A stretch of 63,140 nt of DNA, the filler included, from Hyphochytrium catenoides (taxonomy: Eukaryota; Protista; Hyphochytriomycota): the NCBI GenBank assembly GCA_900088475.1. It is 9 parts of 9 records of this genome, joined end to end, with 100 filler letters (N's around TTAATTAATTAA, not from the genome) between each part and the next. Parts side by side here need not be neighbours in the genome. Positions count along the whole stretch, not along the records: positions 12,161 to 22,382 come from FLMG01002536.1; 8 more parts are not named here. One strand, written 5' to 3'. The notes below the pieces were generated by a model that did not search any database, had not been told where the DNA came from, and saw only the letters and a program-made list of their open reading frames with translations. Positions 12,061-22,382 of the stretch are shown one piece after another. How positions within the stretch are numbered: the stretch's first letter is position 1; each line of letters starts with the position of its first letter. A program made the position numbers and the translations under genes.

Positions 12061-12414
12061 NNNNNNNNNNNNNNNNNNNNNNNNNNNNNNNNNNNNNNNN
12101 NNNNTTAATTAATTAANNNNNNNNNNNNNNNNNNNNNNNNNNNNNNNNNNNNNNNNNNNNTCAATGCTAAGAGAAAGCGTCGTCGGCCGTATCGTACGGG
12201 AGCAACTTTCCCCTTCTTAGTAAAGGCAGGTGCTCAGGGCGACAGAGTATATAAGGCGAGCTCGAGCGGATAAGGATTCACTTGGTCATGTCCTGTGGCG
12301 TTGAAAGGGAGTCCCAGCGGCATAGGGGCATGCTATAGACGTATAAATGACAGAATTAATATGATGGTATAGACACTTCTCTGCTTTCGGGTTAGCCTTT
12401 AGACTTGTTAGCAG

Positions 12415-15400
12415 TTAAGTCTGAGGAGGGGTCCGAGGAGGAGCTTGGTTCATCTTTTCCTCAGGACCACGAGGCGGTGCAGGTAGATGCCCTTCTCTGT
12501 GGACTCCTACTGGTATCGACTTGTTCGCCCAGGGAGCAGCTGTGGAGGCAGAGGGAGCAGCCCAAGGAGCGCGAGTAGCAGGGAGCCCATCTGCCCCAGC
12601 AGCAGCCCATGGAGCTTGTGTCTTCACTCCAAGACCTGGAAAGGGGCCGCAGCAGTAGTGAAAGAGTTGTGAGACGGGGTTAACCTCTCACGAATAGGCA
12701 TAGTCTGGTGAGACTTGCGAGCTTTACCATATCCTGGGCAGTAACAGAGAACATTGCGATCAACTAAACTTACTGGGCTGTCTGACTTCTCTTTCTCCGC
12801 CAGCAGCTGGCTCCCAGTCACAAGGAAGAATTGCACCAAAGACGAAGTGCTGGATGACAGGGAGCTTTCCCAGCACTTCGTTATCGTAGTACTTGAGCAT
12901 CCCACTGTTCACCTTTGTCCAGGATGGGACGCCACTGATGTCGTTCAGCATGGGTGAGCTCTCCGCAAAGGGAACTCCTTTCTTCACCTACAAGGGGTTG
13001 CATCCAGCGCTATTTAGTGGACATGAGAGTCTTTTGACGGCAATAGAAGTTGTTGCAATAAGGCTGAACGTTGACCATCATATCTATAGGAAGTCCTGAG
13101 AAGGACAAGGACACGAAATGGACAAGGTGATAGTTTGGGGCTACGGAGGTTTGACCAGACAGTGATTTGGCTCTTCAAGGAGGGAGCAGAATGTAGTTGG
13201 AGAGGTACAAGAAGTTTCCCGTACTGTCGTGATGAACTTTATGGCATCGAGGTACAGATAGTCGTCCGCGAACTGGGAAATAATATCCTCGTTATGTATG
13301 GAAGACGGCTGAATAAGGGGATGTTCTTCAGGCGGGACGGCGGCATGTCAGAGATACAGTCAAGCACGAAGAGGACCATATTGATATCCATTATATGGGG
13401 CCAAATCAGGCAGAATACGAAGAGTAACGACCCAAGGAGTGCCAGGATGAAAGGGTTGAAATAAAGAGTAGAAGAAGCTCAAGCAATAGCTTCTCAGAAG
13501 TTTCAGTAGACTCGAGTTATCAGAGAGAAATGTCTTGGGCGATCGCTGCAGAGCAAAGCAAGCGCCATAAGTATGGGCGGGGAAGTCATCGAGACGTTGA
13601 GGTAGGAGGGCGACATACCTAAAAGCTGGCTGGCTCCCCAGTAGAAGACTAGCATCTGGTAGTCGTCGAGACCCCAGACGCCATGCGACCCAGCGGGCTC
13701 TAGCATATAAACAGTTTGCAGCCGACGCATCAGCTTTAAATACCTAGAAATAGAGGGATGAACAAAGAATCAGCGTATGCCCAAACATCTCAGGTCAGGG
13801 AGGAAGAATTATTCCAGCTTCAAATGTCAGTGGGGAAGATGATGGCGTCAATCGAAGGTGAGCAAGGACGAGAACAATCCCAAACCCTAGGTGGCTCCAT
13901 AAGAGAAAGCGAACGAATTGGAAAAGGTGTAGGACAGAGAGCCTATAGACCACTAGCAAAGTCCTACTCCTCTCTACCTATCAAAAACTCGCAAAACAAT
14001 GGCTGGGCAGTCAGGGGCCTGCAGGTACCCAATTTTATACAAACAACCTGAGATAGAGGGCAATATCGTCAGCTCCACACACGAAAGAGCAAAGAGCACA
14101 GAGTCAGAACATGCCAAAAGAGGGGAGGTCGCTACGAACAACGAGACTCAGTTCCAAACCCTATGTACCAAACGCCAAGCAGTGATGCTTGCATATGAGA
14201 GCCTAGTAGCCGTGCTTACAAAGGAACATGACGAAGCATGTCTCATGCCCGCTTCCGTAATCTATCCGGGTAGGATTGCCGAAGGAGTCTTGGAGATAGG
14301 GGAGTAGTTCCACTACAGCAGCGTGCAGCTCGGAAGGAAGAACTTCTGAGAGCATATGAGGACTCCTCTGAGCGCAGGCGCGATCACGAGCCAAAAGATT
14401 CGATTTGACGACGTCCAAAAAAAGAGCGAGAAGAGAGCAGAGAGGACCAGCTGAGTACAAGAGTGAAAACAAGAAGGGCTCGGGAGCCTTTTAAGTCATT
14501 TTGTAGAGTCGGCCGGTCGGCTAGTGCATGTGGTATAAGAGACAAAGCAGCATCTCATAACCCCGCAAGGTGGGGAGCTGAGTGGGCCGGATAAACCAGA
14601 AGAGAGTTGCACGGCCAAACAGTGCACGGCCTGGAACTTGCACGATAAGAAGCCCACATTCATCTGAAATGAAAGAAGACTCATATAGACCCATACTTTT
14701 TGTGCACCTACCTCTACGAGTCTTGCATGAAACTTTTTGAAAGCTTTGTTGCCGAATCGGCCCAAAGTTGAGGGTTCTGGCGGGATCTCATCTATCCAGC
14801 TGTCCATCGTATCCAGTATAGACTCTACCTTTGCCAGTGCCTAAGGAGGAGCATATGTCAATAGGACAGCAAGATGTGGGAAGCAAGGGTGCCACTCAAA
14901 AAAGGAAGGGACAACAAGCAAAAGAAACCCAAGGACCAGTGGAAGGGGCAAGGCAATTGTAAGGAGATGAGTCATAGAGCATAAAGGATTTTGCAGATGA
15001 AGCTTTCCAACTTGATTGGTCCGGCCTGCAAACACGACGAATATCAAAAGGGCAAAGGAGGTAGATGGGTGCTAGATGGGTGCTGAATTGCCTCCACTGG
15101 CTCTTGGACTAGAGATAATCTTGGTATACCTCAGAGACAGGATAAGAGTCACTTTTCTTCTTTCCCTTCACACTTTCATTCAGTAACCGCACGAAGAGCA
15201 TGAGTTCTTTATAGCTCTGAGGACGAAGGCATGCGAAGAGAAAAGAAGAGAGATGAGGGGGTGATGGGCATTGAGGAACAGAAAGAGCCATGAAGGTAAA
15301 GGCGTATTAGGCTGAAGGATAAGCAAAACTCCGGCAGATGTTCGCGCGATTGAGAAAACGAGAGCTGAGCAGAGGGATGGAAGAGTGGAAGAAGCTTGAA

Positions 15401-15827
15401 GAGGAAAGGAAGGATTGTGGAGAGAAGGGCACCCTATAGTATGTCCCTCACGAAAAGCGAGAGATGCTGATAAGGGCTGTCTCAACACGTTAGGGAGCCG
15501 CTGAGGGAGCAGAGGTAGAGTGAGATAATAGATCTCAGGCCAAGCAAACGAGCACAAACAGGAATGCAAGGAGGAAGAAAATATTGAGGGCGCCTTAGCT
15601 GTGGCAATCAACTCACACTTAGAGAGAATTGCGTGAAGCAAAGAGGAGAGACTTGACAGGGCGGCATCAGAGAAGTAAAGAAGATAAGAAGCGCAAACTA
15701 AAACCTGAGACTGCCGAAAGGCATGCAGGTCCTGCGGGACGAAGATGGCGCGTTTCGGGAGCTTGTACTGAAAGTCCGCAGCCTTGGTGGGACCGGAGTC
15801 AGTCACTTGTCCCGTTTCGGATGCCAT
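12415..15827 (-). CDS. PTPA: Serine/threonine phosphatase 2A activator (PTPA / Rrd1-Rrd2 family), multi-exon
   Basis: Exons encode [53 protein letters not shown] and [15 protein letters not shown]; ATG at 15827; last exon ends at 12415. Confidence 0.95.
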
Positions 15828-16721
15828 AGTCGCTCGCTTGCTTTAGGAAATCTGGCTTGCTTCTATCCTCCTAAAGCAATGCTGCGTCTTAGCACTGGGC
15901 AGTTCCACTGCGCGGCTCTGTCTTCTCCTGAAGAACTTCTCTATTTGCAGCGCCTCTGTTCTGCTGAAGAAAGCGAGTGTGGAGCCTGCCGCTGCTCGGT
16001 GGGGTGACGCTCCTGCCGCTGCTGCCGCCAGCTCGCGATCAGAACCCTGGCGTTATCTTTTTTGGTACAGACTTGAACTAGATCTGCACGAAGAACTTAG
16101 TCATCTCTTAGAAAGTAACAACCTATCTCCCGAATATGGCTCTAAGTCTGATATTATAGCGCTGCAAGGAAAAGCGTTACCGAATATAGGTGGTGACACT
16201 AAAAGCAGTGATGACAATGGACAGAAAGCAGTAGCAACCAGTTTCTCACTCAACAGACGAAGAGCAAGAAGCCCTGTCCTCTTCCGCTTTGGGATGCTCC
16301 TCGACACCATGCGGCCTTCTCCTCTCCTGTTTCTCCGCCGCTGCTGGTGACCGACCTCATGCAAAAAGCTGGCTACTACTTCGTAGTTTGACGGCGGCTG
16401 CTTCTCTTATAGAGCTGAGGGCCATGGAAGAGCTGGGTTGGAGGACGGTTTAGCTCGTTTCGAAGCCAGTCAACGGCCTAACATACTCATCTCATCGCAC
16501 TCACGCAGAGGCTAGTCAAGCAGAGAGCCCTGTGTGTAGGTTTTGTCTAGGTAGATCGCTGTCTCGAACACATTGGGACGGAGGGAGTCACGCCCAGGAG
16601 TATCGTCCTTGTAGGGTTAGTAGTATCTACATCGACTATCTAGTTTAGGTTATATATATATATATATGTGCAAGGGAACAAAGGGATTCGCTATGCCACC
16701 GTAGAGCTGGTGCTTCGACCC

Positions 16722-19700
16722 TCACGTTATAGTACATCCACCGCTGTATCCATCAAGGTTAACATCGGTCTCACGTCCCCTTCCCCTTGCCCTGAAGAGT
16801 GAATAGGTAAGGTAAGCGCCCAGAAACTCTTGAGTCGTCAACGTCACGCAACAGACAGAATGACAGGACAGGACAAAAAGAGAGAGAGAAAGAAAGAAAA
16901 GTGAGAGACATAGAGAGAGAGAAAGTGAGGAAAGAGGACCGATTAGCGAGTAGTTGCGCATACAATGTCACTTTGGTGTCCTCGATCACTTTCGAAGTAC
17001 CAACGGATAGTCTCCAAGGCCTTACCTCCTATTCTCCGAGTACGCGATCCCATAGTTTCTCTTCAAAAAGCCCCTCAATGACCGATATTCGCTGCTCAGT
17101 CTGCTCATCTGCTTCTCTAGGGTCTGGCGATGCTTTTCATCGTCTTCCTGGGCAAGTTTCTTACCTAAATCTTCAACAGCGTAGGCAGCAGCTCGGAGCC
17201 TATAGCGGGAGGAAGTTCGCGAAAAGCGGAAAGTGACGCAGCGCTTAGACAGAGTAGTAGAAAATGATGGCCCTATAAAAGAATAGGCATCCAACCTCTC
17301 TGCTGCCACATAACTCGAAGCTCCTTTCAGAGAATGTGCTTCCCGATACATTGACGACCAATTTTCCATGTTATAAGCCTAATGAGCAGTTGCCAAACAG
17401 AACAGTATTAGTGAGCAAAACCGGACCGACGTGGCAGCTCCCAAGATCTCTGCCACCTTACCTGAAGGATCCTCTGCATCGTCTGCTGGCTCCCTGCCGC
17501 GAACTTCTGCAGCATGTTCGAGAAGAGCTCTTCATCGCCTCCGCAGTTTTCGAGCCCACTTTCATAATCTATGGGATCGAATCCCTCATTGCCTCCCTCT
17601 AGTCCCTCTGGGGCTGTTTCTCCCGAGGCCTCAAGTTGTCTCTCTCCCGCCGCAGCACTTTGTCCTGGCAGATCTTCTCCTTCGTCGTCTTCCTTTTCTT
17701 CTTTTCCTTCCTCACTCCTCTGTCGCCGCTCTTCTTCAATTCTGGCTCTGAGGATACCCTCAAGCGCGGAATTGGTCCCTGACCCGCTGTCAATAGTGCT
17801 GCCGTTCCCCGGGTCCCCAAAGTCTTGCCCATTCTCGCTACTGTTGGACATGTAAGTGTCTGTGAAGCGTGACGAGTCCCCGGCAACCGCAGCATTAACC
17901 TTGATTCAGGCAAGCAGGAGTTAGTCAGGGCGAACCAGTACGTGTAAGATAAGAAGTGATTGTATAGGGAAAAGGTTCTGGTTTAGGCAAGAGCGGATTC
18001 AAATTAGGCACAACCAAACTCAAAAGCAGAGGAAATCTTATAGAACAGGCCACAGGAGCAGCTGCTCCTGATCCTAGGAATCCCCAGGGACGGGTGTTCG
18101 TTTGCGCAATGACGTGATAGAACAGAACGTTTGATAGAGATGAAAAGTGGGTTTCCGGGTCAAGAGCAGACCTCAAGTTTCATAGTCTCCAAAGCCTGGT
18201 TAACATTGATCGTGTCAATGGCATCAACAGCAGTCGAGGGTAGCTCTTCTCGCTTGAGTACTTCTCCCTTCAGAGGGGTTGACAACTCTTTGCGGCTACT
18301 CTTCCGATCCAAAAGGCATCGCATTACGATGCTGTTCAACTTTTTCCTGGAAAGCAGACAAGGACGGTTGAGTTGAGGTGACGAGAGGTCCAAGCACAGA
18401 CAGATAGTGAACCAGTATGAAGCACACCATCAGAAGGTTAGGAAAACGAAGTGGACATGAAGATTGGCGGACATGGATCATCTCGTACAAGAGCATCGCG
18501 ATTTTCCTGGGAGGGCACAGAGCAAAGTGAACCTGTATCTACCCCTTGCTCACCTTGTAACTGGTTTTGAAAGATACTCGTCCATTCCATGCTTGAGACA
18601 CTTTTCCCGGTCTCCAAGCATTGTGAAGGCAGTCAAACCCACGATAGGAATACGAGGGAGGTTGTGTCTTTGTTCGTACTCTCTTATGCGCACGGTGGCC
18701 TCATAGCCATCCTATGCATGGAGAAAGTGCATAGAGCGAGAGCGAGAGGAACATAGCGGAATGAGAGCCTGTATAATTGGCTCCTCCTCCGACCCTACCC
18801 CTTCATACGTAGCGAGAGCATTCCCCATAATGAACCACTTTTCTTACCATCACTGGCATCTCACAGTCCATGAGTATGATATCATAAACGTTAGCATTCT
18901 TCTCGTATTTCTTGACCGCCTCCTTTCCATTCGTTGCCCAGTCAAATGTGTGCCCTTCTTTCACTAGGAAATTCTGTACTACCTCCATGTTGAAGTTATT
19001 GTCCTGTAAGGGTGTGGAAAGGCAGTGAGAAACACACAGTGGGAGGACTCGGTTTGAAGGGTAGCCCTAGCAGGCGGACCTGAATGAGAGCCAGATTTCA
19101 TCCAAAAGGAAGTGAGAAAGTAGGTGGCATAACCTTCTAGCTGTTTGAGAAACGTGATGACTACGAGGTCAGCTTTGGGACTGATCTGAGACTATAAAAG
19201 TAGGTAAAAAAAGGCTATGATTTGGGAAACTGGCTCACCTCCACCACAAGAACATGTGCTTCCGCCTGCTTCTCTTTCTCTCCTTGCATCTTCAGCAGCG
19301 CCTTCGCTTCCTCCTCATAGCCAATGACATCCAGGACGTTGCTTGGGCCCTCTTGCAGGGCTCCAACATCGGCGCTGGCGCTTTCATTTCTCATGAAAAC
19401 AACCGTGAAATAGAAGGTGGAGCCTTGCCTACCCAAGATGCAACACCGCACAAGTGGCAGTAGGAGACAGTCATGAGGAAGAAAGAAGTGAGCCACCTAA
19501 AAGATACCCTTGGCTTTCGGGGCTACCTTCTCAAGACTGTAGCGTGCAAACCGAATTGATCATGTGGCCATCACACCCGTTAGAACCGTCGAGAATGTTC
19601 CCGGTCGCACTATCTTTTTGTATCATCCTCCCAACCTATTGCTCCGGTCTGAGGCAAGTCTTACTTTGGTTTGCTTTTGACGCCGATCTTTCCGCCCATG

Positions 19701-22382
19701 AGCTCTACGAGCTGCCGGCAAATTGCCAGTCCCAGACCGGATCCAGTGGGATTCTGCTTCCTCGTGCTATTTAACTTGGTGAACATCGAAAATAGATGTC
19801 GCATATCCTCAGTGTTCATCCCAATGCCAGTATCAGTCACCTGTGAATAAGGGATCGTAGTCTTGGTAAGTGCTGCTTATGGCTCAATTTGTTTAGTGCC
19901 GATGGGCACTTAGACGCTCAGACCTTGAAGAGGAGGCACAGCTGACTATCGGCTAGGCCTTCAGGCTGCGGGTCCGCGACGTGACAGCTGACGATAACGC
20001 TGCCTCCCTTTGGGGTGAACTTCACAGCGTTTGATATAAGGTTGAGGATCACCTGCACAGCACAACGAAGCTACATTAGTGGTTGACACAGAGAGAGGCT
20101 GGCAGGCGGCCACCAGTGACAAGGGCCTTTGGGTAAGGGTTAATTAAGATGGAGACAGCTCAAAACTCCTAAGAAGCATGAGACGAGACGAAAGGAGGGG
20201 TGGGGTGTACTCACCTGTCTTAGTCTCATGACATCCCCAGCAACCACTGCAGGTACATCTTGGTCCACTTCCAGCGTCATGACGATGTTGTGGGATGCAG
20301 CCTGCGGCTTCATAAACGCCAGAGTGGTCTCCAAAGCGTGCTTAACATTAAATGGAGAGCATGACACTTCCAGGCGACCAGCCTCAATTTTGGAGAGGTC
20401 CAAGATATCATTGATAAGGTTGAGCAGAAGCGATCCAGAAATGAAAGCAAGTCTAGAGGTGGAGGAGTGTTAGAAGTTGCACACTCGCCAATGGACAGGG
20501 GGTTTACAGGGGAAAATAGAGAGATAGCGCGATAGGAGATGGCCAAGAGCAGCAATGACGAGCAAAGGGACTGCCCCATGACAGGCGATAAAGTAGCCAG
20601 CAAGACGACGGCAAGTGAAATCCGGGCAGTCCATTAAAGTAAAGGAGAAGGGCTTTCACGATGCCAATACGAGCCGCTATCTACTGGTGACCGTTACCTT
20701 GCATATCTCCGTGCTTCCTCGTCTAGATCCATCCCCATTAAGAGCTCCAGCATACCAAGAATGCCATTGAGAGGTGTCCGCAGCTCGTGGCTAAAGGAAG
20801 CAAGGAAGGTGACCTATCGGAGGTACGGAGACAGGTCAAGATCAGCCTCAAGAGCAAAAGGCGACCTATCGAATCAACATCCATTCTNNNNNNNNNNNNN
20901 NNNNNNNNNNNNNNNNNNNNNNNNNNAGCTCCCTCATGTTTTACACCCAAACCAAGCTTGCGCACCTTAGCTTCTTCCATCTTCTTTCTCGCAGTCAAGT
21001 CTTGTCCAATACAGACTACGCTGATGACGTTGCCGTCTACGTCCTTCCTGCCAGTTGCTGACGCCAGAAGTACTCTTTCTTCACCCCTTTTGGTCTTGAA
21101 GGGAAGTTCAAACTCCTCTGTCTCAAGACCGATAAGAGCATTCTCCAGGACCCTGCGTACGTTTGCTCTGCTTTTGGCGGCGACAAAGCTTCGAACCTTT
21201 AAGAACATATATATCAGCACAAGGGTCAGGAACAGCGATGAAATCAAGAATGCTAGAGCGAGCAAGAAAGGAAATGATGTCATTGCTTGCGCCCTTCAGA
21301 CTTATATCCTTACCAGCACCCTCCCAATGACCTCAGACTTGGAGAAACCAGTTATCTCCTCAATCTTCAGGTTCCACTCATTTATTTGCCCCTTGGAGTC
21401 GATTCCAAATATCGGCGCTGCAGAATTGAGAAACATGGATGAGGTTCGCGATAAGTTACGCCGTGAGGGGCGCGTGAGGGGGGAATGGAAGGACAGTTCA
21501 ATAGAAAAAAGATTGGAGCGGAAAGACAGATGGTAGGGCCCATCTACGACTAGACTTTCCGTATGGGATGACGCATCGCCGTTGCAGAAATCGGAGTTGC
21601 TTTGGTACGCAAAAAGAAGAGCAGTACGACTTGAAATGATAAAGGACCAGGAAGGTGGGCACAGGGAATGAGACGAACCATTGGCACTCTCAATGAGTCT
21701 AAAATACTCCTTCTCTTGGGCGATTCTCTCTGTGATGTCCTGCCCAATTCCAACCATGCCCACAATATTTCCCAGATGATCTCGACGCGGTGTCGCACTC
21801 AACAACAGCTCAACCCGTATCCCTATAATCAAACGTCAGGGTCAGATTGAGGAAGGGGGCACAGGATCGTCGAGTCTTGGGCTTTCAAGGGAACATTTAC
21901 TAGTGGATACGAAAGTATGTAGCACAACGCACGAAAGTGTATGCGAGATCGCGGAACAATCTCTCTTTGGAGGGATGTTACCTCTTCTGGTGATCAGTGG
22001 GAACTGGAAATTCGCTGTGTCTTCACCTTGGAGGGCAGATTGAATGACAGCGTTGACCGCATCCCGGTATTCAGGGATGATAAAGTCCTCAACTAGGTTA
22101 CGACCCATAACGTCTTCTTCCTGTGGTTATTGTCAGCTGGCATCCAAAGATAAGTTCTTCCATAGTTCTTTCATTCTACCCTATCTCTTACATCTACAGA
22201 TATTCTGTCCGCCAGCTTCCTGCGCCACGTGCCTCTGTGACCCCTCCAGAACTTACTCTTACATTAATAACCTAATCTCGCTCCCATTCCTTTAGAAGAA
22301 AGTGGTAGCTGCTGCACTGCCTTGACTGAAGGCAATCGGTACGAACCCTATGGTACTCTCTCTCACCTTGAAGTGCGTGATG
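16722..22382 (-). CDS. Multi-PAS hybrid sensor histidine kinase with receiver, fused HPt domain and CaaX-like C-terminus; 5' truncated
   Basis: PAS repeats (APIFGID...NEWN, GIGQDIT); H-box [11 protein letters not shown]; N/G boxes [24 protein letters not shown]; REC (LVVE|[12 protein letters not shown]|DG, GLTA, SKPV); HPt AHSLKGASS; final exon ...GGCTIT*. Kinase and REC are certain. Fusion to HPt and the last exon rests on phase-compatible splice sites. Confidence 0.85.
17026..17899 (-). CDS. Linker and histidine phosphotransfer (HPt) exons of the kinase gene
   Basis: [24 protein letters not shown]...[18 protein letters not shown]|RAAAYAVE. The acceptor before 17899 has a CTGACTAAC branch-like motif and is in frame with ORF 17408..17851. 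Confidence 0.88.

What the first reader, a model, noticed from the sequence alone, without database searches (positions are those of the whole stretch)
16722..17026. Hidden last exon gives the kinase/HPt a basic stretch plus CaaX-like box; intron retention would delete it
Seen: after ...YSENR a strong donor (ag|gtaagg, 17025) and a pyrimidine-rich acceptor (ctcttcag|g, 16791) join in phase 2 to give [24 protein letters not shown]. Cys at -4 preceded by basic residues is the classic prenylation layout (as in Ras/Rho and G-gamma), although X=Thr is a less typical CaaX end. Unspliced, the donor itself supplies an in-frame TAA (ENRR*). Inference: a two-component protein anchored by eukaryotic prenylation rather than transmembrane helices, with a possible soluble isoform. 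I do not know of a described prenylated HK or HPt.
Basis: partly seen in the sequence, partly recalled or inferred. Interest (0 to 1): 0.72.

Follow-up and report, generated by a model that had tools for sequence, protein, structure and literature searches.

The report
Possible CaaX-tailed hybrid histidine kinase exon
A signalling kinase gene of an unidentified intron-rich eukaryote probably has one more tiny exon, whose end (Cys-Thr-Ile-Thr) could take a lipid anchor, but no RNA or related genome was available to prove the splice.

Summary
On the minus strand the HPt reading frame ends ...YSENRR-TAA, and that TAA lies inside a consensus donor, gag|GTAAGG (G at 17025). The best acceptor downstream is ttcag|g (exon from 16791). 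It gives a 234-nt intron and the tail [26 protein letters not shown] (stop at 16722).

In silico support for the intron is good:
- The donor ties with the best of 13 homology-backed donors of the same gene.
- A true TAA stop would sit in such a context with p about 0.001.
- Intron length and pyrimidine content match the real introns.
- Three internal introns of the gene show the same stop-inside-the-donor pattern.

CTIT is also listed as prenylation-positive and cleavage-positive in a published yeast Ras-reporter screen.

The splice itself remains unproven. No RNA run was listed, and no orthologue turned up in a 1.8-billion-protein search or two metagenome scans. Codon usage of the 22-codon exon is inconclusive, and other acceptors would give tails without a Cys.

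The basic stretch lies 13-20 residues before the Cys with an acidic gap between, so this is not the Ras/Rho layout. The N-terminus is off the piece, so "instead of transmembrane helices" cannot be judged.

My estimates: intron real about 0.7, CTIT tail made about 0.5, protein prenylated about 0.2-0.25.

The parts
19665..19840 (-). HATPase_c exon of the hybrid histidine kinase
   Evidence: Pfam HATPase_c E=6.4e-15. Flanked by GT-AG introns.
20215..20452 (-). Exon with the end of HisKA and the start of the catalytic domain. The H-box SHELRTPLN lies in the preceding exon, near 20800.
   Evidence: Pfam HisKA E=0.003 for profile positions 48-66. The H-box was read from the sequence.
18554..19003 (-). 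Receiver (REC) domain, two exons: 18848-19003 and 18554-18711
   Evidence: Pfam Response_reg E=1.3e-6 and 6.3e-7, profile positions 12-55 and 56-101.
17462..17899 (-). Linker exon, acidic and low in complexity. It ends with the first HPt helix (...[24 protein letters not shown]).
   Evidence: The frame is open and in phase with the REC exon through the intron 18171-17900. It resembles the HPt repeats of P0001 and P0003. Its link to the kinase gene is inferred, not shown.
17296..17378 (-). HPt exon carrying the phospho-accepting His motif ([16 protein letters not shown])
   Evidence: Pfam Hpt E=4e-6, above the gathering score. 58% identity to the HPt repeats of P0001.
17026..17199 (-). Last homology-backed HPt exon ([15 protein letters not shown]...[14 protein letters not shown] + AG)
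   Evidence: Read from the sequence and the model of intron 17295-17200. Pfam does not recognise this exon on its own.
17022..17024 (-). In-frame TAA that ends the unspliced frame. It lies inside the donor GTAAGG.
16792..17025 (-). Candidate terminal intron: 234 nt, phase 2, gag|GTAAGG...ttcag|g
   Evidence: Donor 11.3 bits and acceptor 5.5 bits. CT content 0.65, against 0.50-0.67 in 13 real introns and 0.36-0.53 in exons. Length is within the observed range of 83-272 nt. No RNA evidence.
16722..16791 (-). Candidate terminal mini-exon: G + [22 protein letters not shown] + TGA
   Evidence: CT content 0.34, which is exon-like. Codon-usage score +0.8 bits, inconclusive.
16725..16736 (-). CTIT, the CaaX-like tetrapeptide codons (tgt act ata acg)
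   Evidence: Sequence. CTIT is in the yeast Ras61-screen positive sets of PMC9231725 S1 File.
16827..16830 (-). Rival acceptors caag|ag| (first exon base 16828 or 16826). They are the first AGs after the long pyrimidine tract.
   Evidence: They give the tails [19 protein letters not shown] and [33 protein letters not shown], neither with Cxxx. PWM scores are -2.1 and 0.0 bits.

Best explanation
The gene on the minus strand is an intron-rich eukaryotic multi-PAS hybrid histidine kinase. Its order is PAS repeats, HisKA, HATPase, receiver, then a fused C-terminal HPt domain.

The apparent stop after ...YSENRR is most likely not the end of the protein. It is the TAA inside the GTAAGG donor of one more phase-2 intron (17025-16792). 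Splicing to ttcag|g adds a 23-residue flexible tail that ends in CTIT.

That tetrapeptide is a competent CaaX box in yeast. The spliced protein could therefore be farnesylated on the Cys, trimmed and methylated, which would hold the phosphorelay output domain at a membrane. Retaining the intron would give a protein that lacks the tail.

Shown: the sequence elements, the domain content, and the statistical strength of the donor. Inferred: use of the splice sites, the choice of acceptor, fusion of HPt to the kinase, and any lipid modification.
For: Domains:
- Pfam finds PAS, HATPase_c, Response_reg and Hpt on successive exons.

Donor and intron:
- The donor gag|GTAAGGC scores 11.3 bits on a matrix from 13 other introns of the gene.
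- 0 of 501 other minus-strand GTs reach it.
- The chance that a real TAA stop has this context is 0.0012.
- Three internal, homology-backed introns (donors at 20697, 19664, 18553) are also phase 2 with the stop inside the donor.
- The candidate intron is 234 nt with CT content 0.65, like the real introns. The flanking segments are exon-like at 0.39 and 0.34.

Acceptor:
- 16792 is the best AG in the 500 nt downstream.
- The AGs at 16786, 16780 and 16744 are in the same frame, so they also end in CTIT.

CaaX competence:
- CTIT is in both the prenylation-positive and cleavage-positive sets from the yeast Ras61 screen (PMC9231725 S1 File).
- The residues before the Cys (DGYSGG) are small and polar, as expected of an accessible linker. 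This last point is inference.
Against: - There is no transcript evidence at all, because no RNA run was listed.
- No orthologue or close relative was found, so the Cys cannot be shown to be conserved.
- The codon-usage score of the mini-exon is +0.8 bits. That lies between intron windows (-4.3 +/- 6.8) and exon windows (7.8 +/- 4.0), so it is neutral to slightly unfavourable.
- The acceptor matrix discriminates poorly: leave-one-out scores of real acceptors run from -3.3 to 8.0.
- The first AGs after the pyrimidine tract (16829, 16827) give tails without a Cys.
- The nearest detectable HPt relatives, P0001 and P0003, do not end in Cxxx.
- The Arg cluster is 13-20 residues from the Cys with acidic residues between, so it is a poor second membrane signal.
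- The yeast result is for a tetrapeptide on a Ras reporter, not for this protein or this organism.
Confidence: 0.45

Rival explanations
1. TAA at 17024-17022 is the true stop and the protein ends ...YSENRR. On this reading the donor-like context is a coincidence, the pyrimidine-rich stretch is ordinary 3' UTR, and the CTIT frame is never translated.
For: - The HPt four-helix region is complete before the stop. HPt is the last domain in comparable kinases (PMC6324907).
- Codon usage of the mini-exon is not clearly coding.
- There is no RNA or orthologue support.
- High-scoring unused donors do occur, for example tag|GTAAGAA at 17164 inside the HPt exon at 9.1 bits, and 2 of 519 plus-strand GTs at 11.3 bits or more.
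Against: - The probability of such a donor context at a real TAA stop is about 0.001.
- The stretch after it has the length and composition of this gene's introns, and an exon-like segment follows.
Confidence: 0.28
2. The intron is real but a different acceptor is used (16829, 16827 or one further downstream). The tail then has no Cys at -4 and there is no prenylation.
For: - caag|ag are the first AGs after the roughly 80-nt pyrimidine tract.
- aAG acceptors are used elsewhere in this gene, at 21197 and 17900.
- These acceptors give open tails of 19 and 33 residues.
Against: - Their matrix scores are -2.1 and 0.0 bits, against 5.5 for 16792.
- The 20 nt before them are only 45-50% pyrimidine, against 80% before 16792.
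- A cttac branch-point-like repeat sits roughly 12-27 nt upstream of the 16792 AG (read from the sequence).
Confidence: 0.2
3. The mini-exon is internal. Its TGA also overlaps a donor-like ac|GTGAGG (G at 16725, phase 2), so further exons would follow and CTIT would not be the C-terminus.
For: The donor-like site scores 5.8 bits, inside the range of the weakest real donors (4.9-8.0).
Against: - Position -1 is C, whereas 12 of 13 real donors have G there.
- About 4% of decoy GTs score as high.
- Pfam found nothing in the one downstream ORF tested (16104-16364), and the PTPA gene starts at 15827.
Confidence: 0.05

Closest known systems
Multi-PAS hybrid histidine kinases with an HPt domain fused after the receiver. 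These include the Albugo laibachii HKs and Physarum polycephalum PpolyHK5/PpolyHK18 (Kabbara et al., PMC6324907), and the bacterial tripartite kinases of ArcB/BarA type.
   Same: The domain order is the same: PAS repeats, HisKA, HATPase, REC and a C-terminal HPt with the HxxKG motif.
   Different: No lipid-anchor motif is described for any of them: 'prenyl' and 'farnesyl' occur nowhere in that survey. Here the fusion of HPt to the kinase rests on an inferred intron (18171-17900). The N-terminus is missing from the piece.
Canonical CaaX proteins (Ras, Rho/Rac, G-gamma, Ydj1), which are farnesylated or geranylgeranylated at Cys -4
   Same: The tail has a Cys at -4 with an aliphatic a2 (Ile). CTIT itself scored as prenylated and cleaved in the yeast Ras61 screen (PMC9231725 S1 File). 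A flexible Gly/Ser linker precedes the Cys.
   Different: The tail exists only if an unverified splice is used. There is no polybasic or palmitoyl-Cys second signal next to the Cys. The Arg cluster is 13-20 residues upstream, behind an acidic stretch. X = Thr is uncommon among natural substrates; that last point is from my own knowledge.
Metagenomic multi-HPt proteins P0001 and P0003, the only significant HPt relatives among 1.84 billion representatives
   Same: They share the HPt core motif [14 protein letters not shown], with 57-58% identity over 27 residues.
   Different: They are Ala-rich proteins of tandem HPt repeats with no kinase. They end in ...APPSVV and ...GEPPS, not Cxxx. They are not orthologues.

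Membership tests
CaaX prenylation substrate | Cys exactly four residues from the C-terminus of the translated protein | tested here: inconclusive
   This holds only for the spliced model 17026^16791 or the in-frame acceptors 16786, 16780 and 16744. The splice has in silico support but no RNA evidence.
CaaX prenylation substrate | Tetrapeptide accepted by a protein prenyltransferase | tested here: met
   Tested against the literature only. CTIT is listed under 'Prenylation (positive)' and 'Cleavage (positive)', sets drawn from top-scoring yeast Ras61-screen sequences (PMC9231725 S1 File). It has not been tested for this organism's enzyme.
CaaX prenylation substrate | Conservation of the terminal Cxxx in orthologues | not testable with these tools
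   No orthologue was found. The word search was blank. The HMMER search of 1.84 billion representatives gave 3 non-orthologous hits. Two metagenome scans were blank.
CaaX prenylation substrate | Demonstrated lipid attachment or Cys-dependent membrane localisation | not testable with these tools
   This needs an experiment.
Polybasic-plus-CaaX membrane anchor (K-Ras4B / Rac type) | Cluster of basic residues directly upstream of the prenylated Cys, within about 10 residues | tested here: not met
   In [24 protein letters not shown] the nearest Arg is 13 residues before the Cys. The 12 residues between hold three acidic and no basic residues.
Hybrid histidine kinase with fused HPt (tripartite, ArcB-like) | HisKA H-box, HATPase_c, receiver and HPt domains all present | tested here: met
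   Pfam HATPase_c 6.4e-15, Response_reg 1.3e-6 and 6.3e-7, Hpt 4e-6, HisKA 0.003, plus the [10 protein letters not shown]-box read from the sequence.
Hybrid histidine kinase with fused HPt (tripartite, ArcB-like) | All domains on one polypeptide | tested here: inconclusive
   The frames join consistently through the inferred intron 18171-17900. A separate HPt gene starting at ATG 17851 is not excluded, and there are no transcript data.

The most novel reading that the evidence does not exclude
A eukaryotic two-component phosphorelay protein (a hybrid kinase with fused HPt, or a stand-alone HPt) is farnesylated at a C-terminal CTIT encoded by a 70-nt terminal exon. Retention of the last intron, whose donor supplies the stop codon, then switches the protein between a membrane-anchored and a soluble form. 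No prenylated histidine kinase or HPt protein was found in the full-text searches.
Probability: 0.2. Interest if true: 0.6.

Novelty: new variant of a known kind. Interest (0 to 1): 0.4.

Why it matters
Eukaryotic two-component kinases are placed at membranes by transmembrane helices, or else they are soluble. A lipid-anchored one would be a new way to localise a His-Asp phosphorelay. A terminal intron whose retention removes the anchor would be a simple switch for it.

There is also a practical lesson for annotation. In this genome a stop codon inside GTAAG or GTGAG is a recurrent signature of phase-2 introns, seen in 3 of 13 internal introns here. ORF-based gene ends are therefore likely to be truncated.

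As it stands this is a reasonable, testable hypothesis that rests on splice-site statistics and a four-residue motif. It is not a demonstrated feature.

Tried and rejected
- RNA evidence. The look-up of sequencing runs (kind rna) on 16500-18000 listed no run, so read laying could not be used.
- Earlier scan findings.
- Orthologues:
  - The word search with the 115-aa HPt ORF was blank.
  - The full HMMER search gave only two multi-HPt proteins and one spurious repeat protein.
  - Metagenome scans with the last HPt exon and with the linker/HPt exon were both blank.
  - Exact look-ups of two window ORFs found nothing on record.
- Organism. It was not identified. The pyrimidine-rich introns of about 230 nt and the gap inside the gene resemble what is described for Physarum polycephalum (PMC4758236). 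However, peptides of this gene do not occur in that paper's held supplements, and the Kabbara survey has no held supplements. This remains a guess.
- Codon usage. The coding-potential test of the mini-exon was inconclusive.
- Pfam. It does not recognise the last HPt exon on its own.
- Rejected reading. The hydrophobic ORF start [29 protein letters not shown] (around 21283-21197) is not a transmembrane helix. It lies inside the intron 21313-21197.
- Left out. The two-base join was made only inside scripts, to read the candidate tails.

Full report
**What is there**

The piece (12161-22382) carries two minus-strand genes of an intron-rich eukaryote.

The upstream one runs from the piece edge at 22382 down to about 16700. 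Pfam finds the following on successive short exons:
- PAS folds
- the end of HisKA
- HATPase_c (E=6.4e-15)
- a receiver domain in two exons (E about 1e-6 each)
- an HPt domain (E=4e-6, above the gathering score, with the motif [16 protein letters not shown])

The H-box SHELRTPLN is readable near 20800. I placed 13 GT-AG introns of 83-272 nt, using domain continuity and reading frame.

The gene is therefore a multi-PAS hybrid histidine kinase with HPt fused behind the receiver. That architecture is already reported for Albugo laibachii and for Physarum PpolyHK5/18 (PMC6324907). The link between the receiver and HPt rests on an inferred intron (18171-17900), so a separate HPt gene starting at ATG 17851 is not excluded.

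The downstream neighbour is a PTPA (PP2A activator) gene, with ATG at 15827 and its last exon ending at 12763.

**The observation**

It holds as described.
- The HPt frame ends ...[12 protein letters not shown].
- The TAA (17024-17022) is part of gag|GTAAGG, with the G at 17025.
- The intron would be phase 2.
- The acceptor ctcttcag|g (exon from 16791) gives R + [22 protein letters not shown], then TGA (16724-16722).
- Unspliced, the protein ends at ENRR.

**Is the intron real?**

No RNA run could be listed, so I tested the sequence against the gene's own introns.

The donor is strong.
- A weight matrix from the 13 other introns gives it 11.3 bits, equal to the best real donors.
- None of 501 other GTs on this strand reach that score, and only 2 of 519 on the other strand do.
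- Enumerating all contexts, a genuine TAA stop would fall in a context this good with p=0.0012.

The 'stop inside the donor' picture is what real phase-2 introns of this gene look like. The donors at 20697 (ag|GTAACG), 19664 (aa|GTAAGA) and 18553 (ag|GTGAGC) all end their ORFs the same way.

Length and composition also fit.
- The candidate intron is 234 nt with 65% C+T on the coding strand.
- The 13 real introns have 50-67% C+T and the exons 36-53%.
- The flanking HPt exon has 39% and the mini-exon 34%.
- The sequence further downstream has 52-44%.

The acceptor at 16792 is the best AG in the next 500 nt (5.5 bits, 80% pyrimidine in the 20 nt before it). A cttac repeat sits at a distance typical of a branch point.

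Three points weigh against it.
- The acceptor matrix is weak. Leave-one-out scores of real acceptors run from -3.3 to 8.0.
- The first AGs after the long pyrimidine tract (16829, 16827) would give tails without a Cys.
- The codon-usage score of the 22 codons is +0.8 bits. That lies between intron windows (-4.3 +/- 6.8) and exon windows (7.8 +/- 4.0, scored on their own training data), so it is inconclusive.

My estimates are about 0.7 that an intron starts at 17025, and about 0.7 that, given the intron, the tail ends in CTIT. The acceptors 16792, 16786, 16780 and 16744 all share that frame.

**Is CTIT a prenylation signal?**

The supplement of Berger et al. (PMC9231725, S1 File) lists CTIT in two sets:
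- the 'Prenylation (positive)' set, which combines sequences from a yeast Ras61 screen (enrichment above 3 at 37 C) with sequences from a Ydj1p screen
- the 'Cleavage (positive)' set, drawn from the top-scoring Ras61 sequences

The tetrapeptide is therefore a working canonical CaaX box for yeast farnesyltransferase. The residues before the Cys (DGYSGG) are small and polar.

The 'basic stretch plus CaaX' layout does not hold, however. The five Arg lie 13-20 residues before the Cys, with ETDVNLD between them. The stretch reads more like an RG-rich segment than a polybasic membrane signal.

**Relatives**

Conservation could not be tested.
- The word search was blank.
- The exhaustive HMMER search of 1.84 billion representatives gave three hits. 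Two are Ala-rich multi-HPt proteins from a metagenome, 57-58% identical over the His motif. They end in ...APPSVV and ...GEPPS.
- Two metagenome scans and two exact look-ups found nothing.

The organism was not identified. Its introns and the assembly gap resemble descriptions of Physarum (PMC4758236), but that is a guess.

**Novelty**

Full-text searches for histidine kinase or phosphotransfer proteins together with prenylation terms returned only unrelated papers: bacterial Abi/CaaX-protease-like proteins, cytokinin reviews and optogenetic CaaX tags. The eukaryotic HK survey does not mention prenylation. A prenylated HK or HPt would therefore be new.

**Verdict**

- The hidden exon is likely but unproven, at about 0.5 for the CTIT tail.
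- Prenylation is plausible, at about 0.2-0.25 overall.
- The claim 'instead of transmembrane helices' is untestable, because the N-terminus lies beyond the piece.
- The soluble isoform is speculation.

The joined spliced protein was not submitted to any search or fold tool.

Noticed in passing
window 12763-15827, minus strand: The downstream neighbour is a multi-exon PTPA (phosphotyrosyl phosphatase / PP2A activator) gene. Pfam PTPA matches four ORF pieces, with E down to 3.5e-22. The ATG is at 15827 and the stop at 12762-12760.
   Followed up: partly
window 20888-20926: A run of 39 N (assembly gap) lies inside the kinase gene, between the last PAS exon (...KKMEEAK) and the H-box exon. The stretch that should precede SHELRTPLN (usually ...FLA..) is missing, so a small exon may be lost in the gap.
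   Followed up: no
window 16725, minus strand: The TGA that ends the mini-exon also overlaps a donor-like ac|GTGAGG (5.8 bits, phase 2). This weakly raises the possibility that the mini-exon is internal.
   Followed up: partly
window 17164, minus strand: A strong donor-like site, tag|GTAAGAA (9.1 bits), lies inside the last HPt exon (codons D-L-G-K-K). It is presumably unused. It shows that good decoy donors do occur in this gene.
   Followed up: no
window about 16651-16668: A (TA)n microsatellite lies about 55 nt after the mini-exon stop, in the presumed 3' UTR or intergenic region.
   Followed up: no
window 21197-21313, minus strand: An intron translates into a very hydrophobic peptide ([29 protein letters not shown]). 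An ORF-based reading could mistake it for a transmembrane helix.
   Followed up: yes
whole piece 12161-22382: The introns are pyrimidine-rich on the coding strand, with a median length just over 200 nt, and there is a gap within a gene. This matches published descriptions of the Physarum polycephalum assembly (PMC4758236), but the organism was not identified.
   Followed up: partly
L001 (ENA ERZ841384 NODE_27973), P0001: A 587-aa metagenomic protein made of three near-identical tandem HPt units in an Ala-rich frame. It is the closest detectable relative of this HPt domain.
   Followed up: no
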